A DNA stretch of 64,000 nt from Styela clava (GCF_964204865.1 NC_135258.1:7564001-7628000); one strand, 5' to 3'. Counted from the first letter of the stretch, positions 19,395 through 64,000 are shown. A program made the numbers and translations. The notes: generated by a model not told the origin, from the sequence alone.

Positions 19395-22300
19395 ATGGAA
19401 ACAGAGGTTGAAATATCTCCAAACGAAAAAGTTCTAGCCGAACAGTTGAAGGCAGTTTGTACACCCTTCGGTGATGAAAGGCGATCAAAACTAAAGGAAT
19501 CAACTGATATTTTGTTTGAAATGGGCAAGTTATATCTTGAAAAAGCAAAGTCATCTACAGGAATGAAACAAAAACTTGATTTTATAAAATGTTCTGCTTT
19601 ATTACACGGTGCTAAAGTTCGATATGAAAGAATATTATACGATATAAAAGGAGGAAATGAAGTTCACAAATTCCTCTTATCAATGGAGAAAGTGTTGTTG
19701 CAAGCTTGTGGAGGTAAACAGTGTGATATAACTCTCTCTGAATTATCCTCTCATATTTCAAAAACATTCAAGAATCTAAGAAAGGATGAAAAAGCTAAGT
19801 TACGTGAATTGGAACCACTTGATGAAGATCTTTCTGAAGATGAAATTCTTGAAAAACAGTTGAATAAAATTGAAACTATCCAACACATGATGAAGGAAAA
19901 CACACAAAATTATATTGATTTAATGAAATGCATTGCTTATTATTGTATGAAGATTCTAGGAGATTGTCCATGTTCGTTTGCTCTCGTTGGTTTGGGATCT
20001 TTGGCTCGGGAAGAAATAACTTTATATTCTGATTTTGAACACATAATAATTCTTGAAGAGGGTATCGATGATTCTCCAAATTATCATGAAGTGAAAGAAT
20101 ATTTTAGATGGTTTGCTGTGATATTTGAGATTATTATGATTGGTTTGGGTGAGACTATAATCAGAAGTGTTGGCGTGAAAAGTATAAATGACCTTTATTC
20201 TGAGGATAAGTCTAAAAATTGGTATTACGACAGTTTTACTACTAGTGGTGTATCTTTTGATGGAATGGTTCCCCATGCATGTAGTACACCTCTGGGTAGA
20301 CAAGAACCAACAAAAAATCGTAAGCACAAAGTTGAACTGATTCAACCTGTCAGTAAAATGGCTTCGTATCTAACATCGGATGAAGAAATCAAAAATGGTT
20401 ACTATTTGAAAGAAATGCTCATAAGAACTTGCTTCGTTGGGGGAAATAGGGAGTTATATGATGAATTTCAAAGTCATAAAATAGCAATTCTTAATAAGGA
20501 GATAAAGTATGATGTTTCAAAAAACATTGAAAGACAAATAACCAGAAACGTAAACTTGATAGTTACAGGAAGGATTGTTACAAATATTGCTCGCAAAATT
20601 GATGTGAAAAACTTGTTTTATAGACCAATCACTGCGCTTATTAGTTATTGGGCTCGCCTTCTTGAGGTTCTAAATAATTTTTATCTGACAACATCATCCA
20701 GCTTTCTTATTTCTGAGATGATGTGTAATTTTCCTCTTACATATGCGCTTGCAGTTGCTCATGAACTGCGCTTGAAAATATATGCAAAATCGGGATGTCG
20801 TTGGTTCAAAATTTATACGGAGGAAATATTTGAATATGTCAGTAAAAATTGTGCTACACATTGCCTCACACAAATATTTGTTCTTAGCGATAATCTTCAT
20901 GAAAAGGCCAGAGAGGCCATGCTTATAGATAAACCTTCATTTGAAAATCGGCCTAAAACAATATCTGATGGAAAAACTTTGGCCCAGATGCAATTAGCAC
21001 GTTTTGAAGATGCCATTCCTAAACTTCGGGAAGAAGCAAGTTTAGAAAAAGATTTATTGAGTGCTAAACCTTCTACTGATAATGAAATCGGGATATACGA
21101 TCTGAGGGTGATTGAAGCCACATTGATGGCAGCTAGACAAACCAATAAATTACCTCCAACAGAGTGGATCAACCATACAGAGATTTATTTGAAAGAAATT
21201 ATTGAAGATGGTACAGAACATCCAGCTAGGATTTCGTTTGCAATGAACTTGCTGGACATTGTGTATATATTTCAAGTTAATCCTAAAGAATCAATTGAAT
21301 TAAATAATCATCAATTTGAAAGATTTATTGGTCATGCGGGGACCCAATTTCTGATGCAAATTCGTTTCACCCAAGTAATGCAAATGACGATTTGCATGAG
21401 TCCTGCAGAAATGTTAGAGTATTGTATGGAAGGGATGAAAAAAAACAATGACATATGCTCACTCTATGGCTTTAAACTTGGAATAGCTTTTGCAGAAATA
21501 GAGATGGGAAACAAAGTTGAAGGTGCCGACAAGTTGCTTTCTTTGGTAAAAGATCTTTTTGAATGCAAGTGTCGTATGTTCGGGAAATTACTTACCTTAG
21601 AAATTGTGGCGTATATATTTGAATTTCAGATGGTACAAAACTTATTAGAGGATGCATATCAGACTTTGGAATTAGCAAATATCATTGAAGAATCTCAAAT
21701 TGAAATTGTTAACTTGGAAGCTGTGAGTGAAGGTATTTTATCAAGTGGACTGGTTGGAATGTGTTATGTGGAAAGAGGCATTGAAGAACAAGACATTAGT
21801 AAGGAGAAGGAACTTCTTTTAAAAGGCATAAGTTTCTGCCGGTCACCTCCTACAAGAGAAAGATTGAAGAAATCTACCAAGCACTATTATGAATTGGGCA
21901 TCAAGTCATATATACGTACATGTTTGGTTTCTACGGAATTGCAAGACGTACCAAATATTTGTAGTCTTTACTCTGATGCTCTGACCTCCTTGAAAAATGA
22001 CAGTTTCTTTCGTTCATATTTTCTTATGGTTATCCCAAATTTACTTGCTATTTTTATTGCAGAAGAAAATCTGATGTTAGTCCTCTATTCAATATCATTT
22101 ACTATTGATCATTTACAGAGTTTGTTGTGTCACCCATTCGTGATTAGTGAGATGAAAAGTTTTTTGACCAAAATACTCAAAATTGTACTGTGGGAATCTG
22201 TGTTCTGCGATCCTGCTTTGACTGCTATAGTAATGCAAGCAGAATTGGATTCTAATTGTTTAGAAAGTTTGAACAATATTTTATCACATTATGAAGAAAA

Positions 22301-22739
22301 TTATTTCTTTGCATCAGTTGCTACTGTATGGAAAAGATTAATTAAGGGCTGCTTTTCAGCTAAAGATCTTCAACAGATTAATTTTTTTGTTGGACTCAAA
22401 CTCTTTATCTCCCTTGGACAACATTCTTGTGATTTTGTAACAAAAACTATAAAAGAATACTCTTTGATTGGTGACAATATGACCAGTAATTTGTATAACA
22501 AAGGTGTTCAACAATACATAGACAATGACTTCCAATCTGCTGCCCGTTATTTTTGGAAAATAGTCAACAATACCAAACATCGATCAACTACACAAGTACG
22601 TTCTATTGTAATGTTGTATCACTCGATTATCAAAAATCCATCCGGATTTGATCGTTGTGTCATCAAAGGTTATTTGAGTTTGACTCAATCTCATTTTTAC
22701 AAAGGAAGACAAAAGTATCATGTTGCTGGAATACGATAA
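19395..22739 (+). CDS. Nucleotidyltransferase (GlnD/GlnE/DUF294-like) + helical/TPR-like protein, paralogue A
   Basis: 1114-aa uninterrupted ORF; FALVGLGSLAREEITLYSDFEHIIIL; TPR-like LYNKGVQQYIDNDFQSAARYFWKIV near the C-terminus. Confidence 0.8.
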   Translation: METEVEISPNEKVLAEQLKAVCTPFGDERRSKLKESTDILFEMGKLYLEKAKSSTGMKQKLDFIKCSALLHGAKVRYERILYDIKGGNEVHKFLLSMEKVLLQACGGKQCDITLSELSSHISKTFKNLRKDEKAKLRELEPLDEDLSEDEILEKQLNKIETIQHMMKENTQNYIDLMKCIAYYCMKILGDCPCSFALVGLGSLAREEITLYSDFEHIIILEEGIDDSPNYHEVKEYFRWFAVIFEIIMIGLGETIIRSVGVKSINDLYSEDKSKNWYYDSFTTSGVSFDGMVPHACSTPLGRQEPTKNRKHKVELIQPVSKMASYLTSDEEIKNGYYLKEMLIRTCFVGGNRELYDEFQSHKIAILNKEIKYDVSKNIERQITRNVNLIVTGRIVTNIARKIDVKNLFYRPITALISYWARLLEVLNNFYLTTSSSFLISEMMCNFPLTYALAVAHELRLKIYAKSGCRWFKIYTEEIFEYVSKNCATHCLTQIFVLSDNLHEKAREAMLIDKPSFENRPKTISDGKTLAQMQLARFEDAIPKLREEASLEKDLLSAKPSTDNEIGIYDLRVIEATLMAARQTNKLPPTEWINHTEIYLKEIIEDGTEHPARISFAMNLLDIVYIFQVNPKESIELNNHQFERFIGHAGTQFLMQIRFTQVMQMTICMSPAEMLEYCMEGMKKNNDICSLYGFKLGIAFAEIEMGNKVEGADKLLSLVKDLFECKCRMFGKLLTLEIVAYIFEFQMVQNLLEDAYQTLELANIIEESQIEIVNLEAVSEGILSSGLVGMCYVERGIEEQDISKEKELLLKGISFCRSPPTRERLKKSTKHYYELGIKSYIRTCLVSTELQDVPNICSLYSDALTSLKNDSFFRSYFLMVIPNLLAIFIAEENLMLVLYSISFTIDHLQSLLCHPFVISEMKSFLTKILKIVLWESVFCDPALTAIVMQAELDSNCLESLNNILSHYEENYFFASVATVWKRLIKGCFSAKDLQQINFFVGLKLFISLGQHSCDFVTKTIKEYSLIGDNMTSNLYNKGVQQYIDNDFQSAARYFWKIVNNTKHRSTTQVRSIVMLYHSIIKNPSGFDRCVIKGYLSLTQSHFYKGRQKYHVAGIR

Positions 22740-23177
22740 CTTGGAGACGCATTATTATTTGATGATATACATGTGCAGATATTGGTTTACAAACTGTGTA
22801 ATTAGAATTTTTGTGGATTTTTTAATGTCTGATTAATGTGTGTTATGTCTGGTTACCCTGATAAACAATTGAAGCTTTTCAATTTTGCAGAAGTTTGGAT
22901 TAAATTGCACCAAAAGTCTGTGATTTGTTTATACAAATATGGCTCATTTTTTCGGTATGTTTGGTTCTATCCATGTTTTGCTGTTTGCTTTGCATTTAGT
23001 GCAACAAGTCTTCAAACCATTTTGTGTTTTATTTTCAATACACTGATTATGTTATAGCCTACATATTATATTCTTTATTTGAAATACTACATATTGTTAG
23101 ATAATTAGTAATTTATTTTTTGATTTTGATTTAGAAATTTCCTATTCTGTTAGATAATTTGTACCATTGTGAAATTA

Positions 23178-23630: not shown

Positions 23631-24044
23631 TACATTTACTTTTGCCTGATAGACATATACTAACTAATCTATTTAATGATATTCTGAATTCCAGTGGAAT
23701 TCAAAGTCTGTTGTTTTTCCATATTCTTCTCTTTAAATATGGAAGGACATGTTATAATTAGTGTGTATACTTGGCACACTACAGTGCGACAATCATACAT
23801 ATGACTGTGGGATGGCTATGTTTCTCTTAGCTGCCGCCCCTGGAGCTTCCATTTCATCATTTTTGTTGTTTTCTTGGTGGATAACTGTGGAATATATTCT
23901 GTTAAGTGCACTTTTTCTAATGAACATTTTAGCTATGCTTATGAAAGATTTTCTCTGATGTCCTGGAGAAATACAGTATGCTGTTCTATATATTCTTCAC
24001 TGTAAATATGGAAAATCATTTTTTATTGAAGAGTACCTGTATGT

Positions 24045-25969
24045 ATAATTGCCAATATTTTCGAGCTTACTTTTCATTTATATATGTCTTAGCGCAACAA
24101 GTGTTAAACACAATTTCCAGTTTGAATAATTGCCAATATTTTGCAGCTTGCTTTTCATTTAAATATGTCTTAGCGCAACAAGTGTTTAACACAATTTCCA
24201 GTTTGAATAATTGCCAATATTTTCGAGCTTTTCATTTAAATATGTTTTAGCGCAACAAGTGTTTAACACAATTTCCAGTTTGAATAATTGCCAATATTTT
24301 CGAGCTTGCTTTTCATTTAAATATGTTTTAGCGCTACAAGTGTTTAACACAATTTCCAGTTTGAATAATTGCCAATATTTTGCAGCTTGCTTTTCATTTA
24401 AATATGTCTTAGCGCAACAAGTGTTTAACACAATTTCCAGTTTGAATAATTGCCAATATTTTCGAGCTTGCTTTTAATTTAAATATGTTTTAGCGCAACA
24501 AGTGTTTAACACAATTTCCAGTTTGAATAATTGCCAATATTCTCGAGCTTACTTTTCATTTAAATATGTTTTAGCGCAACAAGTGTTTAACACAATTTCC
24601 AGTTTGAATAATTGCCAATATTTTGCAGCTTGCTTTTCATTTAAATATGTCTTAGCGCAACAAGTGTTTAACACAATTTCCAGTTTGAATAATTGCCAAT
24701 ATTTTCGAGCTTGCTTTTCATTTAAATATGTTTTAGCGCTACAAGTGTTTAACACAATTTCCAGTTTGAATAATTGCCAATATTCTCGAGCTTATATTTC
24801 ATTTAAATATGTTTTAGCGCTACAAGTGTTTAACACAATTTCCAGTTTGAATAATTGCCAATATTTTCGAGCTTGCTCTTCATTTAGATATGTTGTACAA
24901 CAAGTGTTTAACACAATTTCCAGTTTGAATAATTGCCAATATTTTGCAGCTTGCTTTTCATTTAAATATGTTTTAGCGCAACAAGTGTTTAACACAATTT
25001 CCAGTTTGAATAATTGCCAATATTTTGCAGCTTACTTTTCATTTAAATATGTTTTAGCGCAACAAGTGTTTAACACAATTTCCAGTTTGAATAATTGCCA
25101 ATATTTTCGAGCTTGCTTTTCATTTAAATATGTTTTAGCGCTACAAGTGTTTAACACAATTTCCAGTTTGAATAATTGCCAATATTCTCGAGCTTACTTT
25201 TCATTTAAATATGTTTTAGCGCTACAAGTGTTTAACACAATTTCCAGTTTGAATAATTGCCAATATTTTGCAGCTTGCTTTTCATTTAAATATGTCTTAG
25301 CGCAACAAGTGTTTAACACAATTTCCAGTTTGAATAATTGCCAATATTTTCGAGCTTGCTTTTAATTTAAATATGTTTTAGCGCAACAAGTGTTTAACAC
25401 AATTTCCAGTTTGAATAATTGCCAATATTCTCGAGCTTACTTTTCATTTAAATATGTTTTAGCGCAACAAGTGTTTAACACAATTTCCAGTTTGAATAAT
25501 TGCCAATATTTTGCAGCTTGCTTTTCATTTAAATATGTCTTAGCGCAACAAGTGTTTAACACAATTTCCAGTTTGAATAATTGCCAATATTTTCGAGCTT
25601 GCTTTTCATTTAAATATGTTTTAGCGCTACAAGTGTTTAACACAATTTCCAGTTTGAATAATTGCCAATATTCTCGAGCTTACTTTTCATTTAAATATGT
25701 TTTAGCGCTACAAGTGTTTAACACAATTTCCAGTTTGAATAATTGCCAATATTTTCGAGCTTGCTCTTCATTTAGATATGTTGTACAACAAGTGTTTAAC
25801 ACAATTTCCAGTTTGAATAATTGCCAATATTTTGCAGCTTGCTTTTCATTTAAATATGTTTTAGCGCTACAAGTGTTTAACACAATTTCCAGTTTGTATA
25901 ATTGCCAATATTTTCGAGCTTGCTCTTCATTTAGATATGTTGTACAACAAGTGTTTAACACAATTTCCA
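24045..25969. repeat. Minisatellite, 24 copies of an 81-bp unit (77- and 78-bp variants)
   Basis: Unit ATAATTGCCAATATTTTCGAGCTTGCTTTTCATTTAAATATGTTTTAGCGCAACAAGTGTTTAACACAATTTCCAGTTTGA; unit starts at 24045, 24126, 24207, 24284 ... 25898. Confidence 0.97.
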
Positions 25970-26376: not shown

Positions 26377-29300
26377 ATGGAAACAGAAGATGAAATATCT
26401 CAAAAAGAGAAAGATTTAGCCGAACAGTTGAAGGCAGTTTGTACACCCTTCGGTGATGAAAGGCGATCAAAACTAAAGGAATCAACTGATATTTTGTTTG
26501 AAATTGGCAAGTTATATCTTGAAAAAGCAAAGTCATCAACAGAAATGAAACAAAAACTTGATTTTATAAAATGTTCTGCTTTATTACACGGTGCCAGAGT
26601 TCGATATGAAAGAATATTATATGATATAAAAGGAAAGAAGAAGGTTCATGAGCTCTTGGTTTCTTTGGATGAAATTTTATTTGTAGCTTGCAAAGGAAAT
26701 AAGTGTGATAAGAGTCTGTTTGAAATTTCTTCTGTTGTTGCTGGAAAATTTAAATATTTGAGAGAAGCTGAAAAGCAAGATTTAAACAGTTTGAGAATCA
26801 TTGATGAAAATCTTCCAGAGAATGAATGTCACCAACAACAATTAATTAAAATTGACGTGATAAAAGATTTAATGAAAAAGAACACAAAGAATTATATAAG
26901 TTTGATGAATTATATCGCTGAATATTGCCTACGGATACTTGGCAATTCTCTCTGTCCTTTTGCTATAGTCGGTTTGGGATCTTTAGCTCGCGAGGAAATA
27001 ACTTTATATTCTGATTTTGAACATGTAATAATTCTTGAAGACGGTATTGATGATTCTCCAAATTATGATGAAGTGAAGGAATATTTCAGATGGTTTGCTG
27101 TGATATTTGAGATTATTATAATTGGTTTGGGGGAGACTATAATCAGAAGTGTTGGCGTGAAGAGTATCAACGATTTGTATTCAGAAGACAAAAGCAAAAA
27201 CTGGTTTTATGATATGTTCACACCAAGTGGTATTGCATTTGATGGTATGGTTCCTCATTCATGCAATACACCACTAGGTAGACAAGAACCAACAAAAAAT
27301 CACAAGCACAAAGTTGAACTGATTCAACCTGTCAGTAAAATGGCTTCATATTTAACATCGGATGAAGACATCAAAAATGGTTACTATTTGAAAGATGTAT
27401 TGTCTCGTACTTGTTTTGTATTTGGTAACGAAGAGTTGTATTTGAATTTTAAGGAAAAATCCAGACATATCTTAGATGGCCAACCAAAACAAGAAATTGC
27501 TACTGATATTCTTAAGCATGTAAGAGAGAATGTCAACCAAGGTGTTAAATCTAAAATTCGAACACATATCAGCGCATCATATGAATTAGATAGCAAAGTC
27601 AATTTTTACAGACCGTTTGCAGTGTTGTTGGGTTACTGGGCTCGATTTTTTAAGTTGAAAGAAGAATCCAGTTTTGAAATTATCGTAAAATCAAAATTCA
27701 ATGAGACGTATCATCATCCAACCATGTATGGCTTTGCTGTTGCTTGTGAAGCAAGATTGAAGCTTTACAGTCGTTGTGAGGGAAATCGAAAGTCATCAGA
27801 AAATATTCTAAATTATATCGGTAAAAATTGTGCCATCAATTGTATATCAATTATTTTGCATCTTGCAGATTCGATAGTGAATTTGGAAAAACGTTATATA
27901 AAAGGTGAATTACTGACCCATGTTTTTCCTGGACCTTCTCCATGTCCGGGTGCATTTGATGGCTCTTCACTGTCGCTTTTATCATTAGGTTTTCTTGAAG
28001 AAGCCCGGGTTAAATTTGAACTGGAGAAATCTTTGCTTGATGAAGATCCATGGAAAGATAGGTTTCCCTATGCTGGTGTACTTCTTCCACTTGCCATTAC
28101 GTACTACCAACTTCACGATAGGTCTGAGGATGTGAATTATTTCAGAAAGGCTGAAAAAGAGATTGAGTGTTTATTAGCAATAGATGAAGATAGTTCAGAA
28201 TCTTTCCTCATTTGTACCATGTTACTGGAAATATATTTTGATTCTGAACGTTATGAAGAAGTTCTAACTCTTGTGGAAAAGTGGTTTAAAAAGGATACTG
28301 TAAAAGATAAAGGCATCACTTTCTATTTACGATTGAGGCAATTCTCAGCTATGGGATTATTAAAAAAGCCAAATGAAATGCTCAATTTTTGCTTGGGAGA
28401 AATTTCAAAGCATGAGGATGATGTTTCACAGTTGCTTTTTCAATTTGGTTCTGCTTTATTTTATATTGACTTGAAGAAAGACGTGCAAGGCAAAGATATA
28501 TTGAGCAAATTATCCGATTCTGTGATGCAAATGAGAGGTGTTCCCAAGGTGGCGGTATTGATTTTCATGTCGTTTGTTTTTAGGACTCAAATGAAGAATG
28601 ACTGGTGGGGAGATGCCTTTATGACATTAGAGAGGTCCAGAATAATACAGGAGTCGCAGATGCAATTGGTTGATGTCGCACATGCCGGTGGGGCTTTAGT
28701 ATGCCCTGATGCTGCCTTGTGCTATACTATAATAGCCAAACATTTTATGCCTGAAGCCAAAAGACCAGAAGTTCTAAACAGAGTGATCGAAATTTGCCGT
28801 CGTCCTGAAAATTTGGTAGTCTGCGTCAAGCATTACCAATATGCTCTCACCTTAATGTTGACTTTAGAGAGCCAAAACTTGGAAGTATTTGATATCAAAG
28901 CATTTAACACAGCATTATCAGAAGCACCGCATGTTGTTATAAGTGACATTACTTTACAAAGTACCGCTTTAAGAAAAGAACTTATTCTTCTTGATTATTA
29001 TCAAGAACAAATATCAAATGGAAAGATCATGGATATTTTTCCCTTGGTTATTTCATTTCTTCACACGTTTAATTTCAATCTTTCCCACCCTTTGCTATCT
29101 GTCAGTATAAATGCACTTTTCATTTCTCTCATAGATGCCTTGGCATTGTTGATATGTCCAGGCGATGGCCAACAAGTAATAAACAGCTTTAATGTTTGCT
29201 TTTGTGTTGAACGACTGCAAGTTTTTCAAATATTTTATGATACATTAATGCTGGAATTAAAACATGAATTAAACCACAGTTCAAATTTCTTTTGGAAAAA

Positions 29301-29667
29301 AGTGCGATCACACCTAACTGTCAATAAACAATACATTTATAAATTGTTGAATCTTGTTATCAAAGCTGTGTCTATTGATAAATGGGGCCAAACTCAAAAA
29401 ATGATAGAGGATTATGCTAATAGGATACTAATAACTGGTCCCAGTGACCCTATTGAATCTAAATACAATTTTGCTATTGCTAATTACCATGTATGCAATT
29501 TTCCTGTTGCTGCAAAATGCTTGTGGGAGGTTATTTGTCAGGTAAAAAAAGGTGACATTCTCCACATTAGAGCTATTGTAACTCTACTGTTTGCTGTAAT
29601 ATTGCACATGAGATCATTTGGCTATATGGTAGATTTTGGCCCAAAGTATATTTCATTGTGCCTGTAA
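26377..29667 (+). CDS. Nucleotidyltransferase + helical/TPR-like protein, paralogue B (divergent C-terminal two thirds)
   Basis: ATG at 26377; FAIVGLGSLAREEITLYSDFEHVIIL; C-terminal KYNFAIANYHVCNFPVAAKCLWEVI aligns with the TPR-like motif of A. Confidence 0.8.
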   Translation: METEDEISQKEKDLAEQLKAVCTPFGDERRSKLKESTDILFEIGKLYLEKAKSSTEMKQKLDFIKCSALLHGARVRYERILYDIKGKKKVHELLVSLDEILFVACKGNKCDKSLFEISSVVAGKFKYLREAEKQDLNSLRIIDENLPENECHQQQLIKIDVIKDLMKKNTKNYISLMNYIAEYCLRILGNSLCPFAIVGLGSLAREEITLYSDFEHVIILEDGIDDSPNYDEVKEYFRWFAVIFEIIIIGLGETIIRSVGVKSINDLYSEDKSKNWFYDMFTPSGIAFDGMVPHSCNTPLGRQEPTKNHKHKVELIQPVSKMASYLTSDEDIKNGYYLKDVLSRTCFVFGNEELYLNFKEKSRHILDGQPKQEIATDILKHVRENVNQGVKSKIRTHISASYELDSKVNFYRPFAVLLGYWARFFKLKEESSFEIIVKSKFNETYHHPTMYGFAVACEARLKLYSRCEGNRKSSENILNYIGKNCAINCISIILHLADSIVNLEKRYIKGELLTHVFPGPSPCPGAFDGSSLSLLSLGFLEEARVKFELEKSLLDEDPWKDRFPYAGVLLPLAITYYQLHDRSEDVNYFRKAEKEIECLLAIDEDSSESFLICTMLLEIYFDSERYEEVLTLVEKWFKKDTVKDKGITFYLRLRQFSAMGLLKKPNEMLNFCLGEISKHEDDVSQLLFQFGSALFYIDLKKDVQGKDILSKLSDSVMQMRGVPKVAVLIFMSFVFRTQMKNDWWGDAFMTLERSRIIQESQMQLVDVAHAGGALVCPDAALCYTIIAKHFMPEAKRPEVLNRVIEICRRPENLVVCVKHYQYALTLMLTLESQNLEVFDIKAFNTALSEAPHVVISDITLQSTALRKELILLDYYQEQISNGKIMDIFPLVISFLHTFNFNLSHPLLSVSINALFISLIDALALLICPGDGQQVINSFNVCFCVERLQVFQIFYDTLMLELKHELNHSSNFFWKKVRSHLTVNKQYIYKLLNLVIKAVSIDKWGQTQKMIEDYANRILITGPSDPIESKYNFAIANYHVCNFPVAAKCLWEVICQVKKGDILHIRAIVTLLFAVILHMRSFGYMVDFGPKYISLCL

Positions 29668-29887
29668 CAATTTTGATTTTATTGGCCCTTTGTGTTGCAA
29701 ATATTTATTTAACAGTTAACAATTATGAAATATTTCCATTCAATCCATATATGCAACTCTTTAGAACAAGTTATTCCTATGTGATCAAGTACAATTTGTT
29801 CCCAGTGTAATACTTTGTCAATAGCAATATTTTTCTTTTTAGAAATGTATATGTAATATTAAAGACCACTCGTATTGGATATTGAAA

Positions 29888-55416: not shown

Positions 55417-58143
55417 GCCTGCCTTAAGTCATGGCACAAATCTTAAACAGTTTCTTCCTTTGACTGCCGAAATAGCAAAAGTACCACCAGGTACGGTATC
55501 GACTCTACGTCATCGTTTTGCAATATATGTCTTAAAGTTTTTTTTTATCAGGAAAAAATACTACAACTTGTGGCGAGCGGGAATAATCTTCGATTTAGGG
55601 TATTTCATGTCATAAATATAAATAATTTATAATAAATACAATACGTTAAATATTCAATCATAATTTAGTTATGTTTAATTCTCTCAATCTTCGCGGTGCA
55701 CTTGGCAACTCGCCGCACCCTTTGGGAACCGCTGCTGTATTCAGTTACAACTTGTTGATCATCGCGAGGGCACCAAAATTGAAGCCCTGCCGGATCTAGC
55801 TTGTTATTTTCAGATTATTATTCCGATATTCTATCGAGAGACACTAATTTCAGTATGAACTTTCCAACAAGGATTCTACTCTGACGCTCGGGTTCTAAAA
55901 CGTTGGGTCATGAAGATACGTTAGGACTGAAAGGTTAGTCACTGGTAGGGACTATTTGCTCCCAAACCCAAGTATTGTTGAACTTTTCAATGTCACTTTA
56001 TAGGATACTTTACTGGACAAATCAAGTCTTGGTTTAACGATTGCATTTAGAATCAATATGTGATGTTTTCCATCGCCGACAATATAGAAATTCGTTTGTT
56101 GAATAGACGTCTACTCCACACTCGACGCAGATTGATAATATGCATATCATATGGATTTATTTATGTGAATACTTATTCGCCTCGATAGCCATTGGGGATG
56201 CAAATTACGGGTATTTTTTTCGAATCGAATCAGCAATCCGATTCTATTTAGTATAATCACATTAACTTCACGTCACGTGAAAATCACGTTAATTTTCTTT
56301 AAATTTGGAAGAATTACAGGATATATTGTATATATTATATAACAATAGTGAACATGAAGAATGGGTAAAGTTAGTCGGTCAACTACCTCGTATATTAGAG
56401 AATATTTATTTTTTGTTGAGCAAAACTACTGGTTCCGCTAAAGCTGGGACCCATATGAAATATTATAGCATAAACAAACCAAATGTACCCCATTTCATGT
56501 TGAAATTATCAAAACAAAGTTAATTTTTCTCAAAATTCAAACAAAGACTTTCGTGGGAATCAAATTACACCACTTTTAGGACAATAACAAGTTTCTTCCG
56601 ACAATTATTAAATTGAAATTTATTTTATCACGATACCTAAACACTAATTATATGTAAGTTCCCATCCGTACGATGTTCATAATTACATATTTCATAATTA
56701 AAGATTTGTATTCTGTGTAAATGAAATCTGAGAATAAAATCAAACAGAGTTTTCTAAAGTTTCTTCATTAACGTGGGCATTGGAGCTGAAGGGTGAACGG
56801 GCGACTGGCAGTTCTGAGACGGTCTACGAAATAGCAATATACGGTGACATCACATTCATTTACCAATAAAATATGCTATAATATAACAACCCCCGGAGCG
56901 TTACTTGGGAAAATGTAAACGCATGGAAAATAAACGCTTTTGGTCGATGACGAAACAATGCCGCTTCGTCGTGGAATCGTCTAGTGTTATCTTTATTATT
57001 ATTATTTTCAAGCAGTTTTTTTCAAATTCTCAAACATACATCCCAAGTAGCCACATATACCGATTACCAGCCGACACTGTTACAACCCTGAATATGCCCT
57101 ATAATCAGCAGTCAGCACGTATTTGTATATATATATATATTACCGGTATTATTTTTAAACAACTCCAAAATCATAACTCAAACAGTCTTGTGGTCGGAAA
57201 AATTCGTGGTGCGAAACATGGTTGTATTTTTATCGCATGCCATATATACAGCAGTTTATTCGTTATTATTGAATAGCAGATACCGTGAATTCGCAAATAC
57301 AAAATGAATTTCATACATTGATATAAAAATATCTGAACAAGAAAATATCCATACAGATCATCATCACCTTTTGAAGAGAAACAATTTCAAAACAATCAAA
57401 ACCCATATAAAGTTGAAATACTGAATTGGAAGAATCAAAAAACAATGGTAAGTAAATATATACTATACAACGTAAGAAACATACATAACATAAAATTTTC
57501 ATTCAGTAGCAAACATAATGTCATATATTTTCATACCGTATTATGAAACTTTGAACAAGGCTCTAATTTACTTTTTGATTAACACAAAAAGATTCACAGT
57601 ACTATTTTTAGAATAATTTGAATCTTTCTGATTCTGCGTCACAACACTATAACCTAGGCGAGCCAGCATGTTGAATTCAATGATAAAACTGCCGCCTATT
57701 GAACACAGAAGCTTGATACAATTATTAACAAAATCAAAGAACTCATATCAGGCCCGATGCATCCAAAACGCTTCACATCCTGTTTAAAAATAAAATACAA
57801 ATTGCATAAAAGGAACATTTGAAGAAGAAAAATTTCAAGTACAAAATGAAAACAATATATTTATGAACATAGGAAAATAAGAATATTATAATAAAAAATA
57901 TAGGGTAATTGAATTTTATGGCAAGATGCAGAAGTCGAACAAATGTAACATGGTTTGAAAAAGATTAGCGATGGTAATAATAGGATGCAACATTTTTGAT
58001 GTGTGATCAGTGATAAAACACAAAACTTAATTTCAGGTCAGGTGTACAAGACATACATTACCAATCTAGTGCTAATCAAGTTAAAGAATTGTTGGAATAT
58101 AACATTTTTTAAATGCTAAGTAGGCATCAAAATATGGGTAATT

Positions 58144-61100
58144 TTATGGTTTCATTGGAAATGCATCTCCAAGTTTTTGCCTTCCTTCATGGCAACTATA
58201 TTGAGTAAGACCTATATATCCTTCAATGACACAGGGATTAAAACCAAATGGATTTTTAATAATGGAATAATACAACATCACAATTGAACGTATTTGTGTA
58301 GTCGAGCGGTGTTTGGTATTGTTGACTAATTTCCAAAAATAATGGGCAGCAGATTGGAAGTCATTGTCAATGTATTGTTGAACACCTTTGTTGTATAAAT
58401 TACTGATCATATTGTCACCAATCAAAGAGTATTCTTTCATAGTTTTTGTTACAAAATCACAAGAACGTTGTCCAAGGGAGATAAAGAGCTTGAGTCCAAC
58501 AAAAAATATAATCTGATGAAGATCTTTAGCTGAAAAGCAGCCCTTAATTAATCTTTTCCACACCGTAGCAACTGATGCTGAGAAATGACTTGCTTCATAA
58601 TGCGAGAAAATATTGTTCAAACTTGCTAAATAATCTGAATTTAACTGTTTTCCTTGATATACTATCCCAGTTAAAGCAGGATCCAGGAATACAGACTTTG
58701 AGAGCGCCATTTTAAGTACTTGAGCAAAAACATTTTTCATTGCACTAATCACAAATGGGTGAGACAACAAACTCTGTGAATTATCAATGGTAATTGACAT
58801 TGAATAAAGAACTATCATCAGATTTTCTTCTGCAAGGAAAATATCAGGAAAGTTTGCCGTAACCATAAGCAAATATGAACGAATATAACTATCATTTGTC
58901 AAAGAGGCAGGAGCATCAGAGTAAAGAGAACAAATATTTGGAATGTCTTGCAGATCGGTTCGAACTAAACATGCAAAGATATATCTTATGATTCCTATTT
59001 CATAGTATTGCTTGCTTATTTTATTCAATTTTCTATCTGTTTGAGGCAACTTGCAGAAACTTATGCCTTTCAAGAAAAGTTCCTTCTTCTTACTAATGTC
59101 TTGTTCTTCAATGCCTATTTCCACATAACACATTCCAACCAGTCCACTTGATAAAATATCTTCAATCACAGCTTCCAAGTTCACAATTTCTATTTGAGAC
59201 TCTTCAATAATATTTGCTATTTCCAAACTTTGATACGCATCTTCCACTAAATTATACAACATCTGATATTTGAATATATACGCCATAATTTCCAGGGTAA
59301 GTAATTTCCCAAACATACGACACTTACATTCAAAAAGGTCTTTTACAGAAGAAATTAACTTGGTAGCACCTTTAAGTTTGTTTCCCATTTTCATCTCAGC
59401 AAAAGCTATTCCAAGTTCAAAGCCATAGAGTGAGCATATGTCATTGTTTTTTTCCATGCCTTCCGTACAAAACTCTAACATTTCTACAGGATTCATGGAA
59501 ATTCTCATCGACATAACTTGAGTGAAACGAATTCGCATTAGGATTTGGGTCCCCGCATGACCAAGAAGTCTTCCAAATCGTTGATTATTTAATTCAATAG
59601 ATTCTCTGTGTTTATGTTGAAATACGTACAAAATGTTCAACATGTCCATTGCAAACAAAATCTTAGCTGGATGTTCCGAACTATCGTTAATAATTCCTTT
59701 CAAATAAATTTCTGTGTGCTCCATCCACTCTGTTGAAGGTCGTGTGTGGGTTTGTCGTGCTGCAAACATTGTGGCTTCAATCACCCTCATGTCAAATACT
59801 GCAGTTTTATCATCAGTAAACGGTTTTTCATTTAATAAATCTTTTTCTAATCTTGCCTCTTCCTCAAGTCTAGGAATGGCATCTTCATAAAGTTCTAATT
59901 GCATCTGGGCCAAAGTTTTTCCATCAGTAAATGTTTTTTGAGATTTTCCAAACATTGATGAAGAGAGTTCATCCCTAGGCATGACCTGTCTGATTTCTTC
60001 GAGAAGATTACTGACAAGAACAATCGTCTGTCTTAGGCAATGTATTGCACAATTTTTACTGACATATTCAAATATTTCTTCCTTATAAACCTTGAACCTA
60101 CGGCATCCTGATTTAGCATAAATTTTCAAGCGCAGTTCATGAGCAACTGCAAGAGCATACTTGATAGGATTACCAAGATAATCACAAAGATCAAAGCTAG
60201 ATGATGTTGTTAAATAATTATTATCTGTACCATCTGTATCTTCGAGAAAACGAGCCCAGTAACTAATTAGTGCAGTGATTGGTCTATAAAATAAATTTTT
60301 CACATCAGTTTTGCAAGCAAGATTTGTTACAGTCCTTCCTGTAACTGTAAAGTTCACGTTTTCCATTATTTGCTTTTCAATGTTTTTAAAAACATCATAC
60401 TTTGACTCTTTTTCTAGAATTGCCAATTTACATCTTTGAAACTCATCATATAACTCCTTATTTCCCCAAACAAAGCAAGTTCTTATGAGCATTTCTTTCA
60501 AATAGTAACCATTTTTTATATCTTCATCCGATGTTAAATAGGAAGCCATTTTACTGACAGGTTGAATCAGTTCAACTTTGTGCTTGCGATTTTTTGTTGG
60601 TTCTTGTCTACCCAAAGGTGTACTACATGCATGGGGAACCATTCCATCAAAAGATACACCGCTAGTAGTAAAATTGTCGTAATACCAATTTTTAGACTTA
60701 TCCTCAGAATAAAGATCATTTATACTTTTCACGCCAACACTTCTGATTATAGTCTCCCCCAAACCAATCATTATAATCTCAAATATCACAGCAAACCATC
60801 TGAAATATTCCTTCACTTCATGATAATTTGGAGAATCATCAATATCGTCTTTAAGAATAATTACATGTTCAAAATCAGAATACAAAGTTATTTCTTCACG
60901 AGCCAAAGATCCCAAACCAACAAGAGCAAACGAACATGGAGAATCTCCCAGAAGCTTCATACAATATTCAGCAATGTATGTCATCAACGTAATATAATTT
61001 TGTGTGTTTTTCTCCATCATGAGTTGGATCGTTTCAATTTTATTTAACTGTTTTTCCATAATTTCAAGTTTTGAAAGTTTTTCATCAAATGGTTCCATTT

Positions 61101-61527
61101 TCTGCAACTGATCTTTTTCATCCTTTCTCAGATTCTTGAGTGTTTTTGAAATATGAGAGGATAATTCAGAGAGAGTTTTATCACACTGTTTACCTCCACA
61201 AGCTTGCAACAACACTTTCTCCATCGATAAAAGGAATTTGTGAACTTTATTTCTTCCTTTTATATCATATAATATTCTTCCATATCGAACTTTAGCACCG
61301 TGTAATAAAGCAGAACATTTTATAAAATCAAGTTTTTGTTTCATTCCTGTTGATGACTTTGCTTTTTCAAGATATAACTTGCCCATTTCAAACAAAATAT
61401 CAGTTGATTCCTTTAGTTTTGATCGCCTTTCATCACCAAATGGTGTACATACTGCCTTCAACTGTTCAGTCAAATCTTTTTCTTTTTGAGATATTTCATC
61501 TTCTGTTTCCATATTCGAACCAATCAT
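58144..61527 (-). CDS. Nucleotidyltransferase + helical/TPR-like protein, paralogue C
   Basis: 1127-aa ORF colinear with A; same GSLAREEITLYSDFE motif; the ATG homologous to A/B is at 61512. Confidence 0.8.
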   Translation of the reverse strand: MIGSNMETEDEISQKEKDLTEQLKAVCTPFGDERRSKLKESTDILFEMGKLYLEKAKSSTGMKQKLDFIKCSALLHGAKVRYGRILYDIKGRNKVHKFLLSMEKVLLQACGGKQCDKTLSELSSHISKTLKNLRKDEKDQLQKMEPFDEKLSKLEIMEKQLNKIETIQLMMEKNTQNYITLMTYIAEYCMKLLGDSPCSFALVGLGSLAREEITLYSDFEHVIILKDDIDDSPNYHEVKEYFRWFAVIFEIIMIGLGETIIRSVGVKSINDLYSEDKSKNWYYDNFTTSGVSFDGMVPHACSTPLGRQEPTKNRKHKVELIQPVSKMASYLTSDEDIKNGYYLKEMLIRTCFVWGNKELYDEFQRCKLAILEKESKYDVFKNIEKQIMENVNFTVTGRTVTNLACKTDVKNLFYRPITALISYWARFLEDTDGTDNNYLTTSSSFDLCDYLGNPIKYALAVAHELRLKIYAKSGCRRFKVYKEEIFEYVSKNCAIHCLRQTIVLVSNLLEEIRQVMPRDELSSSMFGKSQKTFTDGKTLAQMQLELYEDAIPRLEEEARLEKDLLNEKPFTDDKTAVFDMRVIEATMFAARQTHTRPSTEWMEHTEIYLKGIINDSSEHPAKILFAMDMLNILYVFQHKHRESIELNNQRFGRLLGHAGTQILMRIRFTQVMSMRISMNPVEMLEFCTEGMEKNNDICSLYGFELGIAFAEMKMGNKLKGATKLISSVKDLFECKCRMFGKLLTLEIMAYIFKYQMLYNLVEDAYQSLEIANIIEESQIEIVNLEAVIEDILSSGLVGMCYVEIGIEEQDISKKKELFLKGISFCKLPQTDRKLNKISKQYYEIGIIRYIFACLVRTDLQDIPNICSLYSDAPASLTNDSYIRSYLLMVTANFPDIFLAEENLMIVLYSMSITIDNSQSLLSHPFVISAMKNVFAQVLKMALSKSVFLDPALTGIVYQGKQLNSDYLASLNNIFSHYEASHFSASVATVWKRLIKGCFSAKDLHQIIFFVGLKLFISLGQRSCDFVTKTMKEYSLIGDNMISNLYNKGVQQYIDNDFQSAAHYFWKLVNNTKHRSTTQIRSIVMLYYSIIKNPFGFNPCVIEGYIGLTQYSCHEGRQKLGDAFPMKP

Positions 61528-62344
61528 TATTTACTTACGTATACATTTCATATAAGAAATACTATTGGTGTACCTTATAAAAAATAAAACGCTAATTAGG
61601 TGAGAATTACTCCTTATAATCTATATATATACACTTTTATATCAAGGGATTGGCGAAATCAAAAAAAATGGAAATCAAAAAACAGTATTAAATATATATT
61701 ACACAATATATAAAACTTCTGCATATCAACATCAATTAAATAAAACTTCCCAGTTCCCATAGTTACTTAAAATAGATTAGGAATAGTCATAAGTAAAGTA
61801 CTGGCCTTTACTGTCGGGTTATTGGGCTGTGATGAAGATGGCAGGTTTGATTTTATCTATTGGAAAGTTTGTTAAAAACGCGCTACAACATAGTTAAATG
61901 CAAAGCAAGTTCCAAAATATTGGCAATTATACCCTCCAATAAAAAATGTTATGTCACTCATATTTACAGTGAAGAATATATGAAACAGCATACTGTATTT
62001 TTACCAGGATATCAGAGATATCTTCAATTAAAAGGCATAGCTAGAATGTTCATTAGGAAAAAGTGCACTTGAAAGAATATATCACAGTTATCTGACAAGT
62101 AAAAAAAAAAAACACCACAATAGTGATCCATGTCGATTAATAAAAGAAGGTACCTACATCTATTGACACTGAGAATTCAGAAAATCATTCAAACGATTAG
62201 TTAGAATATGTTTATCAAGAAAAAGTACCGGTATATGTAAATATCACAGTGGTACAAATTACCTAACAGAATAGGAAAATTCCAAGTCAATCAATAAATA
62301 TACCATGTATCTGCTACATGTAGTATTTCAAATAAAGAATATAA

Positions 62345-62535
62345 TGATTCCATTACATTTGAACCCACGACAATTGCACTTGCATACTATTGCACCTATG
62401 GCAATTTTGTTTGTTTCACAGATATTATTTGTTTTACTGATATTTGAACCCATACTAACCCTAACCCATGGGTTTTAGCACCCGCATATAGATTGAACCC
62501 GCGGATATACACATGGGTTCAAATGTACGGTCACC
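62345..62535. mobile_element. Short TIR element with internal CTAACCCTAACCC
   Basis: TACATTTGAACCCA...TGGGTTCAAATGTA inverted repeat; flanking direct repeat AATATAA; absent at the paralogous site ~23060. Confidence 0.6.
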
Positions 62536-62636
62536 AATATAACATAATCAGTGGATTGAAAATAGAATACAAAATGATTTGAAGACTTGTTGCACTAAAT
62601 GCAAAGTAAACAGCAAAACATGGATAAAACCATATA

Positions 62637-63012
62637 CAGTAAATGCTCGTTTTAACGCCCGGTCTTGTTTAAGGGCCCGTTTGAATAGCCGCCCGTGTGA
62701 ACAGGACATGAAAATAAATAAGGGCCGGTGCTTGAATACCCGCCCGGTGTAAAAGTTTTTTTTTGTTTTTGCGGATTTGTACCTGCCGTGCAGAGAAAAA
62801 GTCAAAATTTTCATTATTCTCGTTTAAATCATACGTGAGAACTGGAAATTACAATATACGGTATTAATTAATGTAACGATCGATCTTATCTACCGGTATT
62901 TTTGTGTGTAATTTTACTTTAAAAATAACAAGCGCCCCTACTTGAATGAGGGCCCGGTTAGTGAGTATGTTTAAAAAAATAAGCGCCCGGGCTATTAAAC
63001 GAGCAAATACGA
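62637..63012. mobile_element. Tc1/pogo-type MITE
   Basis: TA|CAGTAAATGCTCGTTT...AAACGAGCAAATACGA|TA; empty site at the paralogous ~22958. Confidence 0.7.
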
Positions 63013-63234
63013 TATACCGAAAAAATAAGCTGCACCATATTTGTATGAACAAATCACAGATTTTGGTGCAATTTGATCCGAACTTATGCAAAATTGAAAA
63101 TCTTCGTTTATCACGGAAACCAGACATAACACATAGTAATAAAACATGTAAAACCCAACAAAAATTCCAATAACACAGTTTGTGAAGGCATATCTGCCCA
63201 TGTATATCATCAAATAAAATGCGTCTCCAAGTTA

Positions 63235-64000
63235 TCACATCCTAGCAATATAAAAGTTTTGTCTTCCTTTGTGGAAATGAGATTGAGTCAAACTTAAATA
63301 ACCTTTGATGACACAACGATCAAATCCGGAAGGATTTTTAATAATCGAATGATACAACATCACAATAGAACGTACTTGTGCAGTTGATCGATGTTTGGTA
63401 TTGTTGACTATTTTCCAAAAATAACGGGCAGCAGATTGGAAGTCATTGTCAATGTATTGTTGAACACCTTTGTTGTATAAATTACTGATCATATCGTCAC
63501 CAACCAAAGAGTATTTTTTTACAGTTTTTGATACAAAATCACAAGAACGTTGTCCAAGGGAGATTAGGAGCTTGAGTCCAACAAAAAATATAATCCGTTG
63601 AAGATCTTTAGATGAAAAGCAGCCCTTAATTAATCTTTTCCACACAGTAACAACTGATGCTGAGAAATGACTTGCTTCATAATGCGAGAAAATATTGTTC
63701 AAACTTGCTAAATAATCTGAATCCAACTGTTTTCCTTGATATACTATACCAGTTAAAGCAGGATCCAGGAATACAGACTTTGACAGCACCATTTTAAGTA
63801 CTTGAGCAAAAACATTTTTCATCGCACTAATCACAAATGGGTGAGACAACAAACTCTGTAAATTATCAATGGTAATTGATATTGAATAAAGAACTATCAT
63901 CAGATTTTCTTCTGCAAGAAAAAGATCATAAAAAGTGGAGGTGACTATAAGGAAATATGAACGAAAGAAACTGTCATTTTTCAAGGAGGGCGGGGCATCA
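63235..64000 (-). CDS. Nucleotidyltransferase/TPR-like family paralogue D, C-terminal part only (continues beyond the window)
   Basis: Frame is open to the right edge (DAPPSLKNDSFFRSY...) and colinear with the C-termini of A and C. Confidence 0.8.
   Translation of the reverse strand, partial: DAPPSLKNDSFFRSYFLIVTSTFYDLFLAEENLMIVLYSISITIDNLQSLLSHPFVISAMKNVFAQVLKMVLSKSVFLDPALTGIVYQGKQLDSDYLASLNNIFSHYEASHFSASVVTVWKRLIKGCFSSKDLQRIIFFVGLKLLISLGQRSCDFVSKTVKKYSLVGDDMISNLYNKGVQQYIDNDFQSAARYFWKIVNNTKHRSTAQVRSIVMLYHSIIKNPSGFDRCVIKGYLSLTQSHFHKGRQNFYIARM

What the first reader, a model, noticed from the sequence alone, without database searches (positions are those of the whole stretch)
19395..64000. 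Cluster of four single-exon nucleotidyltransferase + TPR-like genes: candidate undescribed sensor-enzyme (immune/conflict) system
Seen: ORFs A (19395-22739), B (26377-29667), C (58144-61527) and partial D (63235-64000). A, B and C share the invariant hVGLGSLAREEITLYSDFEH, a later conserved FDG, then D.K..FYRP and A.AVA.E.RLK.Y helices and ~600 aa of helical sequence with TPR-like motifs. Established: hG[GS]x[AG]RxExxxxSDx[DE] is the signature of the Pol-beta-superfamily nucleotidyltransferases GlnD/GlnE/DUF294, which are mainly bacterial protein uridylyl/adenylyl transferases followed by a helical substrate-binding domain. Other Pol-beta enzymes (cGAS, OAS) serve animal immunity. Inference: a conserved catalytic head, a variable solenoid tail and local expansion suggest ligand-gated NMPylating or second-messenger-producing receptors. 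I do not recognise this as a characterised animal family.
Basis: partly seen in the sequence, partly recalled or inferred. Interest (0 to 1): 0.88.

Follow-up and report, generated by a model that had tools for sequence, protein, structure and literature searches.

The report
Animal AMPylase-like enzymes with TPR tails
This sea-squirt (Styela clava) region holds five intact, intron-free copies of a large, unstudied chordate gene family. Each copy joins a bacterial-type (GlnE/DrrA-like) protein-adenylylating enzyme domain to a long, fast-diverging helical-repeat tail, an enzyme type so far described only in bacteria.

Summary
A (19395-22739 +), B (26377-29667 +), C (58144-61527) and partial D (63235-64000) are intact paralogues with the quoted motifs. 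C and D lie on the minus strand. A fifth intact copy lies just past the window, and the genome (Styela clava) has at least 19 full-length copies.

Pfam calls DUF294 above its cut-off. An AlphaFold model of residues 1-520 (pLDDT 89) matches the Legionella AMPylase DrrA/SidM (Z 22) and both GlnE domains (Z 18), far above all other chains and not cGAS or OAS. The ATase motif G-X11-D-X-E is kept in 265 of 270 family domains. The tail is a degenerate TPR superhelix. dN/dS is 0.2-0.5.

The family is large: 620 clusters at E<=1e-30. It is massively expanded in amphioxus, and each lineage expanded it separately. Its closest described relative is the Neochlamydia NEX2 family (F-box-DUF294-TPR; 27% identity, E 2e-26). 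I found no paper on the animal family; databases name it only automatically.

Most likely these are active protein NMPylating (probably AMPylating) enzymes whose TPR tails select or sense partners. An immune role is plausible but not shown, and transcription could not be tested.

First readers of this scan noted other members of the family elsewhere in this genome.

The parts
19395..22739 (+). Paralogue A, intact single-ORF gene, 1114 aa
   Evidence: ORF list; Pfam DUF294 at aa 158-241, E 1.2e-5; alignment A1
19989..20039 (+). Catalytic G-X11-D-X-E motif of A (GLGSLAREEITLYSDFE)
   Evidence: Translation
26377..29667 (+). Paralogue B, intact, 1096 aa. Its tail is only about 20% identical to the others, while its N-terminus and core are much closer.
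   Evidence: dS is 0.35-0.5 in the N-terminus but saturated in the tail, which fits gene conversion.
26971..27021 (+). Catalytic motif of B
   Evidence: Translation
58144..61527 (-). Paralogue C, intact, 1127 aa. The conserved start, shared with the other copies, is the Met at 61512.
   Evidence: Pfam DUF294 E 2.6e-7
61168..61509 (-). C aa 7-120: N-terminal TPR-like helical hairpins
   Evidence: AF2 model, pLDDT above 90; VIA-align matches to TPR proteins at Z 8-10
59968..61314 (-). C aa 72-520: GlnE/DrrA-type adenylyltransferase module. It comprises the NTase alpha/beta core at about aa 195-355 and a HEPN/KNTase_C-like helical bundle at about aa 375-516.
   Evidence: DrrA 6yx5_B Z 22.0 over 309 residues; GlnE 1v4a Z 18.3; GlnE 3k7d Z 17.8. 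Foldseek E 4.5e-6 to 6e-6.
60868..60918 (-). Catalytic motif of C: G204-L-G206-S207 ... D218-F-E220
   Evidence: Translation; invariant in 48 homologues
58228..59910 (-). C aa 540-1100: degenerate TPR-like superhelix, the fast-diverging tail
   Evidence: AF2 model, pLDDT 78, all helical hairpins. Foldseek top hits are TPR superhelices: IFT-A TTC21B, APC/C subunits, CTR9, Naa15, TTC7B, OGT.
63235..64000 (-). Paralogue D: its C-terminal 249 aa. The gene runs off the window; the whole gene is intact (1115 aa) and 90% identical to C.

Best explanation
These are functional, intron-free genes of a lineage-expanded chordate family. They encode cytosolic enzymes built from three parts: a short TPR-like N-terminal cap, a GlnE/DrrA-type nucleotidyl (most likely adenylyl) transferase module, and a roughly 600-residue TPR-like superhelix.

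Shown: the fold, the intact G-X11-D-X-E metal and nucleotide site, purifying selection, the expansion, and exchange of segments between copies.

Inferred: by analogy with the only characterised enzymes of this fold (GlnE on glutamine synthetase, GlnD on PII, DrrA on Rab1), the head transfers, or removes by phosphorolysis, an NMP on a hydroxyl side chain of a protein. The variable TPR tail recruits the substrate or binds a regulatory ligand, so each paralogue would address a different partner. The TPR-plus-AMPylase logic parallels FICD, which uses a different fold.
For: - Pfam DUF294 scores above its cut-off in A, B and C.
- The AF2 model of aa 1-520 has pLDDT 89.4 and pTM 0.91.
- The top structural matches are exclusively DrrA/SidM and the two GlnE domains. 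Foldseek E is about 5e-6. VIA-align Z is 22.0, 18.3 and 17.8, against about 10 for the next unrelated chains.
- G[ST]-x10-D-x-E is present in 265 of 270 domain instances from Styela, Ciona, Clavelina, Branchiostoma and unnamed relatives. The G-X11-D-X-D motif defines ATase-type AMPylases (PMC12409994).
- Relatives carry DUF294_C and bona fide TPR_12/TPR_10 arrays.
- The tail of C folds as a TPR-like solenoid.
- dN/dS is 0.17-0.35 in the NTase core and 0.34-0.70 in the tail, and all five local ORFs are intact.
- At least 19 full-length open frames lie on 8 contigs of this genome.
- The proteins start without a hydrophobic leader.
Against: - No biochemical data exist for any DUF294 protein, so the nucleotide, the acceptor (protein or small molecule) and the direction (transfer or removal) are all unknown.
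- Pfam does not detect DUF294_C or TPR in A, B or C themselves. Both come from predicted structure only.
- Transcription was not shown. The runs guessed to be RNA cover the intergenic flanks at the same depth as the gene, so they behave like DNA.
- The third catalytic carboxylate could not be pinned down. E258, D284 and D294 are all invariant.
Confidence: 0.6

Rival explanations
1. Innate-immune or conflict receptors. The TPR tail senses a pathogen-derived or danger ligand and releases the NTase head. The head then NMPylates a host or pathogen protein as the effector step. This would be an NLR-like logic without a STAND NTPase.
For: - Each lineage expanded the family separately: all 21 Styela rows form one clade, Clavelina has its own clade of 12, and Branchiostoma forms one clade.
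- There are hundreds of copies in amphioxus.
- The genes lie in tandem or inverted clusters with mosaic exchange between copies.
- The tail is far more divergent than the head: 14-24% against 40-50% identity.
- One amphioxus model, P0355, has an N-terminal CARD (E 7e-12).
- The TPR_12/TPR_10 arrays are of the type found in invertebrate NLR-like and TPR-CHAT expansions (PMC12314368).
- The nearest described relatives are predicted chlamydial effectors acting in host cells (PMC4209131).
Against: - There is no robust window with dN/dS above 1.
- There are no expression or induction data.
- No death-fold, TIR or other immune adaptor domain is found in the Styela proteins.
- The CARD fusion is a single predicted gene model and may be a merged annotation.
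Confidence: 0.25
2. Nucleotide second-messenger synthases, working like cGAS, OAS or CD-NTases and gated by the TPR tail.
For: They belong to the same Pol-beta superfamily and keep the catalytic carboxylates.
Against: - No cGAS, OAS, Mab21 or CD-NTase chain appears among the significant structural matches. The specific matches are GlnE and DrrA only.
- The helical domain after the core is the KNTase_C/HEPN-like bundle typical of GlnE/DUF294.
- No STING-like or other receptor partner is evident in the window.
Confidence: 0.05
3. Decaying, selfish or artefactual copies: pseudogenes, cargo of a mobile element, or bacterial contamination of the assembly.
For: - The genes are intron-free and multicopy, are dispersed over 8 contigs, and sit next to repeats (an 81-bp array and a high-copy element at 62225-63012).
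- Four loci carry copies with in-frame stops or only fragments.
Against: - Nineteen copies have long open frames of 740-1210 aa.
- dN/dS is 0.2-0.5 and the catalytic core is nearly invariant.
- The genes lie in a 23.5-Mb contig between ordinary animal genes (a prenyltransferase beta subunit, a Myb, a CEP55-like gene) with the same 32-35% GC.
- Runs from four separate studies hold the sequence.
- Orthologous families exist in Ciona, Clavelina and Branchiostoma.
Confidence: 0.05

Closest known systems
DrrA/SidM adenylyltransferase domain (Legionella pneumophila; PDB 6yx5, 3nku)
   Same: Best structural match: Z 22.0, 309 of 339 residues, rmsd 4.0. It has the same G-X11-D-X-[DE] motif, and the same NTase core followed by a helical bundle. 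Pfam SidM_N gives weak hits in Ciona, amphioxus and Neochlamydia relatives.
   Different: Sequence identity is about 14%. DrrA is a secreted bacterial effector whose ATase is followed by a Rab-GEF and a PI4P-binding domain, not TPRs. The substrate here is unknown.
GlnE (glutamine synthetase adenylyltransferase; PDB 1v4a, 3k7d) and GlnD
   Same: Same fold: Z 18.3 and 17.8, Foldseek E about 5e-6. Same catalytic motif. Databases name the animal proteins 'Protein-PII uridylyltransferase N-terminal domain-containing'.
   Different: There is one NTase module, not two. There are no HD or ACT domains as in GlnD and no PII-binding regulatory domain. The module is fused to TPRs, is eukaryotic, and is multicopy rather than a single housekeeping gene.
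Pfam DUF294 / DUF294_C (PF03445 / PF10335)
   Same: A, B and C pass the DUF294 gathering score. Relatives also hit DUF294_C.
   Different: Typical bacterial DUF294 proteins combine cNMP-binding and CBS domains with the NTase (the Pfam family description, from my own knowledge). None of these are present here. DUF294 itself has no demonstrated activity.
Neochlamydia NEX2 gene family (Domman et al. 2014, PMC4209131)
   Same: The core architecture is the same: a DUF294 domain followed by many C-terminal TPRs, in a large expanded family of 50 members. Sequence similarity is direct: 27% identity over aa 99-471, E 2e-26. The two share blocks such as GSLAREE.T.YSD.E, NLGETI, FDG, ELIQP..KMA.Y, VKN.FYR and RLK.Y.
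   Different: NEX2 proteins carry an N-terminal F-box (with or without OTU) and are predicted effectors of an amoeba symbiont. The Styela proteins have a TPR-like cap instead. In an unrooted tree the one Neochlamydia sequence used joins on the branch between amphioxus and tunicates, nested in neither. It is a long branch, so the direction of any transfer is open.
FICD/HYPE (metazoan Fic-domain AMPylase)
   Same: Works alike in outline: an AMPylase joined to TPR motifs. That the TPRs hold the substrate BiP is from my own knowledge. The review read here names the FIC fold as one of three AMPylase folds (PMC12409994).
   Different: The catalytic fold is unrelated (Fic against Pol-beta NTase). FICD is a single-copy, ER-membrane-anchored gene.
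Enzyme-TPR expansions of marine invertebrates (TPR-CHAT, glycosyltransferase-TPR, NLR-like NB-ARC-TPR)
   Same: An enzymatic or signalling head is joined to a variable TPR array. The genes are tandemly duplicated and expanded independently in each lineage (PMC12314368).
   Different: The head domain differs, and no NTPase switch is present.

Membership tests
GlnE/DrrA-type adenylyltransferase (ATase) fold of the Pol-beta superfamily | G-X11-D-X-[DE] catalytic motif | tested here: met
   G206-S207-x10-D218-F-E220 is invariant in A, B and C and in 48 homologues. It is present in 265 of 270 family domains. The motif definition is from PMC12409994.
GlnE/DrrA-type adenylyltransferase (ATase) fold of the Pol-beta superfamily | NTase alpha/beta core plus following helical domain, superposable on GlnE or DrrA | tested here: met
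   AF2 pLDDT 89; Z 22.0, 18.3 and 17.8 to 6yx5_B, 1v4a and 3k7d; the next unrelated chains score about 10.
GlnE/DrrA-type adenylyltransferase (ATase) fold of the Pol-beta superfamily | Transfers AMP (or UMP) to a protein hydroxyl | not testable with these tools
   This needs enzyme assays.
Pfam DUF294 (PF03445) | Score above the curated gathering threshold | tested here: met
   25.6, 26.0 and 31.0 bits against a cut-off of 21.
Pfam DUF294 (PF03445) | Followed by DUF294_C (PF10335) | tested here: inconclusive
   Pfam does not detect it in A, B or C. It is found in relatives P0087, P0040 and amphioxus proteins. The model shows a HEPN/KNTase_C-like bundle at aa 375-516.
GlnD (PII uridylyltransferase), as the automatic database names imply | HD phosphohydrolase and ACT domains after the NTase | tested here: not met
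   No Pfam hit other than DUF294. The tail folds as a TPR-like solenoid.
cGAS/OAS/CD-NTase second-messenger synthases | Mab21/CD-NTase-type fold | tested here: not met
   None appears among the significant Foldseek or VIA-align matches. No Mab21 or OAS Pfam hit.
Neochlamydia NEX2 | DUF294 domain followed by C-terminal TPR array, with direct sequence similarity | tested here: met
   tblastn found 11 places on plasmid pS13. BLASTP gave E 2e-26. Pfam found F-box, DUF294 and TPR_12 on the plasmid protein.
Neochlamydia NEX2 | N-terminal F-box (with or without OTU) | tested here: not met
   No F-box or OTU in A, B or C. The N-terminus is a TPR-like helical cap.
STAND/NLR-type receptors | Central NACHT or NB-ARC NTPase | tested here: not met
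   No such Pfam hit. The whole 1-520 region is accounted for by the cap and the ATase module.

The most novel reading that the evidence does not exclude
Invertebrate chordates have a large class of cytosolic receptors of a kind not described before. In each, a hypervariable TPR sensor gates a DrrA/GlnE-type AMPylase, so AMPylation serves as an innate-immune effector or signalling step. The same module is shared, by ancient horizontal transfer, with effector families of intracellular Chlamydiae.
Probability: 0.2. Interest if true: 0.9.

Novelty: new variant of a known kind. Interest (0 to 1): 0.62.

Why it matters
Protein AMPylation in animals is currently ascribed to two enzymes, FICD and SelO. 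The third AMPylase fold, the GlnE/DrrA adenylyltransferase, is treated in the review read here as bacterial (PMC12409994).

This family would place that fold in chordates, and in large numbers: at least 19 genes in Styela and hundreds in amphioxus. Each gene has an intact catalytic site and its own TPR tail. That makes it testable whether animals use ATase-type NMPylation, on what substrates, and whether the expansion serves recognition or immunity.

The specific similarity to the Neochlamydia NEX2 effector family also gives a concrete case for studying gene exchange between intracellular bacteria and eukaryotes.

Tried and rejected
- A sequence search of PDB with protein C found nothing.
- A profile search of PDB with alignment A2 was swamped by the TPR tails of the homologues. 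It gave no residue-level alignment to GlnE or DrrA.
- The motif-based scan of 185,579 bacterial and archaeal genomes found no relative. The patterns came from tunicate sequences and were too specific, so this is no evidence of absence.
The unnamed ENA, JGI and Logan relatives could therefore not be assigned to organisms, and the listing of cluster members gave them no names.
- Expression could not be judged. The only runs found are kept as contigs and merely guessed to be RNA. They cover the intergenic flanks (57300-58143 and 61604-62374) at the same depth as the gene, so they behave like DNA.
- Sliding-window dN/dS among A, C, D and E shows mosaic dS, which indicates recombination. A few windows in the tail have pN>=pS, but the counts are too small to claim positive selection.
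- AATAAA and sigma-70 scans are uninformative in this AT-rich DNA.
- A recent survey of horizontally transferred genes in tunicates does not list this family (PMC13390645).
- Literature searches for DUF294, uridylyltransferase, or nucleotidyltransferase with TPR in tunicates or amphioxus found no description of the animal family.
- I ran no complex prediction, because I make no specific binding claim.


Full report
OBSERVATION

The window is animal DNA with 30-45% GC (mostly 32-39%). It lies on a 23.5-Mb contig of a 377-Mb genome (G000:C10:7564001-7628000). Several of this genome's own paralogues are identical to proteins that NCBI names Styela clava, so the organism is this ascidian.

The four ORFs are real:
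- A: 19395-22739 (+), 1114 aa.
- B: 26377-29667 (+), 1096 aa.
- C: 58144-61527, 1127 aa, on the minus strand.
- D: 63235-64000, also on the minus strand. Only its last 249 residues lie in the window.

Beyond the window end, D is complete (1115 aa, 90% identical to C). A fifth intact copy, E (1118 aa), follows it. The cluster is therefore A and B on +, then about 28 kb holding a Myb gene and other ORFs, then C, D and E on -. This forms an inverted duplication with arms of 81-91% identity.

The stretch GLGSLAREEITLYSDFE was verified by translation in A, B and C.

WHAT THE PROTEINS ARE

Pfam finds a single family, DUF294 (PF03445), above its gathering score in A, B and C. A plain sequence search of PDB finds nothing.

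I aligned residues 1-520 of C with 47 homologues (A2). AlphaFold2 then gave a confident model, with pLDDT 89.4 and pTM 0.91.

Foldseek's only significant matches (E 4.5e-6 to 6e-6) are the two halves of E. coli glutamine synthetase adenylyltransferase GlnE (1v4a, 3k7d) and the AMPylation domain of Legionella DrrA/SidM (6yx5_B). An exhaustive VIA-align search agrees: DrrA Z 22.0 (309 residues, model 72-520), GlnE Z 18.3 and 17.8. The next unrelated chains score about Z 10.

From the same search:
- Residues 7-120 resemble TPR hairpins.
- Residues 375-516 resemble the HEPN/KNTase_C bundle that follows the NTase in this clade (3l0i, 7ae2). This agrees with the classification in PMC3710099.
- No cGAS, OAS or CD-NTase chain is among the significant matches.

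The motif that defines ATase-type AMPylases is G-X11-D-X-D (PMC12409994). Here it reads G206-S207-x10-D218-F-E220 and is invariant. Across 270 domain instances from Styela, Ciona, Clavelina, Branchiostoma and unnamed relatives it is kept in 265, almost always as D-x-E. The later [FYW]DG is kept in 248.

Further invariant acidic residues are E258, D284 and D294. I could not decide which of them is the third metal ligand.

The C-terminal 627 residues of C gave a usable model (pLDDT 78, pTM 0.71) built only of helical hairpins. Its best Foldseek matches are all TPR superhelices: IFT-A TTC21B, APC/C subunits, CTR9, Naa15, TTC7B and OGT, with E 3e-4 to 3e-3.

In Styela this tail is too degenerate for Pfam. 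In Clavelina, amphioxus and many unnamed relatives the same position holds canonical TPR_12, TPR_10 and TPR_1 arrays, and DUF294_C is detected between head and tail.

ARE THE GENES FUNCTIONAL?

All five local ORFs are intact.

| Comparison | dN/dS |
|---|---|
| Whole gene, pairwise | 0.2-0.5 |
| NTase core | 0.17-0.35 |
| Tail | 0.34-0.70 |

In sliding windows, residues 200-350 have pN about 0.01-0.02 against pS 0.1-0.2. This is purifying selection on an enzyme, not decay.

Synonymous divergence is mosaic. C is close to D over residues 250-700, and D is close to E over 750-870. B is close to the others only in its N-terminus and core (dS 0.35-0.5, against saturation in the tail). The copies therefore exchange segments, as two other first-reader notes on this window proposed. 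No window gives a statistically meaningful dN/dS above 1.

Transcription could not be assessed. The only runs on offer are contigs guessed to be RNA, and they cover the intergenic flanks as evenly as the gene.

Just upstream of A's ATG lies a polypyrimidine-AG (ttgtag). This is compatible with a 5' acceptor or trans-splice site, but that is only what the sequence shows.

FAMILY AND DISTRIBUTION

A domain profile (A4) finds 26 matches in this genome. Nineteen of them lie in open frames of 741-1211 aa, on contigs 3, 5, 8, 10, 14, 17 and 19. There is also a divergent copy on contig 2 and a few broken copies (one search gives the same picture).

Against 1.84 billion representative proteins, the profile finds 620 clusters at E<=1e-30, 1514 at E<=1e-10 and 2204 at E<=1e-3.

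Every named relative is from one of two groups:
- Tunicates: Styela clava, Ciona intestinalis, Clavelina lepadiformis.
- Amphioxus: Branchiostoma belcheri, B. floridae, B. lanceolatum and hybrids.

In amphioxus the expansion is massive. A search with one amphioxus domain returned 837 hits, and the top 120 were all Branchiostoma at E<1e-179. Several predicted proteins hold two or three NTase modules.

These proteins carry only automatic names: 'Protein-PII uridylyltransferase N-terminal domain-containing protein', 'TTC28', 'KLC1' or 'uncharacterized'.

One amphioxus model, P0355, starts with a CARD (E 7e-12) and an fn3 domain. Others are joined to MAM or CUB/LDLa domains, and these look like merged gene models.

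A quick maximum-likelihood tree of the domain puts all Styela copies in one clade (SH-aLRT 100), twelve Clavelina copies in another, and Branchiostoma in a third. The expansions are therefore lineage-specific. The careful tree search did not finish, so these are quick-tree supports.

Whether other phyla have the family was not settled.

A BACTERIAL COUNTERPART

A tblastn search of plasmids found one record, pS13 of Neochlamydia sp. S13. It has 11 matching places lying in genes annotated 'tetratricopeptide repeat protein'.

One of these genes encodes a 1667-aa protein with F-box-like, DUF294 and 14 TPR_12 units. It aligns to residues 99-471 of C at 27% identity (E 2e-26). The two share the family-specific blocks around the catalytic motif, NLGETI, FDG, ELIQP..KMA.Y, VKN.FYR and RLK.Y.

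This is the NEX2 family of Domman et al. 2014. It has 50 members, with an F-box (with or without OTU), a mid-protein DUF294 and C-terminal TPRs. They are interpreted as effectors acting in the amoeba host (PMC4209131).

In an unrooted tree the Neochlamydia sequence is a long branch that joins between amphioxus and tunicates, nested in neither. Common origin is clear, but the direction of transfer is not.

A motif scan of prokaryotic genomes found nothing, but its patterns were too narrow to count as evidence. A 2026 survey of horizontally acquired tunicate genes does not list the family.

HOW IT MOST LIKELY WORKS

Shown: the fold, the catalytic motif, the constraint and the architecture.

Inferred: all characterised enzymes of this fold modify proteins. 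GlnE adds and phosphorolytically removes AMP on glutamine synthetase. GlnD uridylylates PII. DrrA AMPylates Rab1 (PMC12409994). The most likely activity here is therefore NMP transfer to a protein hydroxyl, or its removal.

The TPR superhelix, a protein-binding scaffold, would provide substrate choice or ligand-dependent regulation. Its rapid divergence among paralogues suggests that each copy has a different partner.

I put about 0.6 on 'active protein-NMPylating enzymes with a TPR-specified partner'. Within that space, I put about 0.25 on an immune or conflict sensor-effector role. I put about 0.05 each on second-messenger synthesis and on non-functional or artefactual copies.

NOVELTY AND VERDICT

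The catalytic domain belongs to a known fold and Pfam family. The DUF294-TPR architecture has been noted once, in Chlamydiae. Sequence databases hold hundreds of automatically named animal members. What is new is the following:
- The family is recognised as an animal (chordate) family of DrrA/GlnE-type AMPylase-like enzymes.
- The catalytic site is intact across hundreds of copies.
- The copies evolve by lineage-specific birth and death, with gene conversion.
- The family is specifically related to NEX2.

I found no paper describing it. I class it as a new variant of a known kind, with interest 0.62. Its enzymatic assignment is supported. Its immune and second-messenger ideas remain conjecture.

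Other first-reader notes of this scan flag members of the same family elsewhere in this genome (s1-812129, s1-817528, s1-825805). The last of these corresponds to the intact paralogue I fetched as L006.

Noticed in passing
window 23907-26085: A tandem array of about 27 copies of an 81-bp unit (62-99% identical) lies between paralogues A and B. The 287-aa 'ORF' at 24502-25365 is just this 27-codon repeat read through.
   Followed up: partly
window 62225-63012: A very high-copy interspersed repeat lies between C and D. Summed contig depth is 10^3 to 4x10^5 in all four runs, against about 20 in the flanks, with many loose ends and joints.
   Followed up: no
window 29882-31171 (+): A 429-aa ORF with the CEP55 EABR (TSG101/ALIX-binding) domain (E 4.7e-10) starts only 215 bp after B's stop, on the same strand. 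No AATAAA lies between them on that strand. This may be an operon-like pair of the kind known in tunicates.
   Followed up: no
window 17312-18319 (+): An intron-free 335-aa ORF matches the full prenyltransferase alpha-alpha toroid domain (E 1.9e-96), i.e. a protein prenyltransferase beta-subunit-like gene. It lies about 1 kb upstream of A.
   Followed up: no
window 41421-43859 (-): An 812-aa single ORF with two Myb DNA-binding repeats (E 6.5e-25) lies in the spacer between the two arms of the inverted duplication.
   Followed up: no
window 1621-3174, 8971-9939, 10003-11022 (all -): Pieces of LTR-retrotransposon type: a gag with a CCHC zinc knuckle, reverse transcriptase with RNase H, and an aspartyl protease.
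   Followed up: no
P0355 (Branchiostoma belcheri LOC109461677): An amphioxus family member is predicted with an N-terminal CARD (aa 3-83, E 7e-12) and an fn3 domain ahead of the NTase-TPR body. This is either a true death-fold fusion or a merged gene model.
   Followed up: partly
L013 (Neochlamydia sp. S13 plasmid pS13, 4239-17072): Several adjacent genes of the DUF294/TPR (NEX2) family lie next to an IS4 transposase. One pair (a 341-aa DUF294-only gene followed by an 880-aa gene with DUF294_C and TPRs) looks like a single family member split in two.
   Followed up: partly
G000:C19:5226073-5228435, C10:21597755-21598948, C10:10193388-10194394, C6:13160982-13161293: Copies of the family with several in-frame stops, or only fragments, lie here. 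Some of them sit near intact copies, which suggests ongoing birth and death.
   Followed up: no
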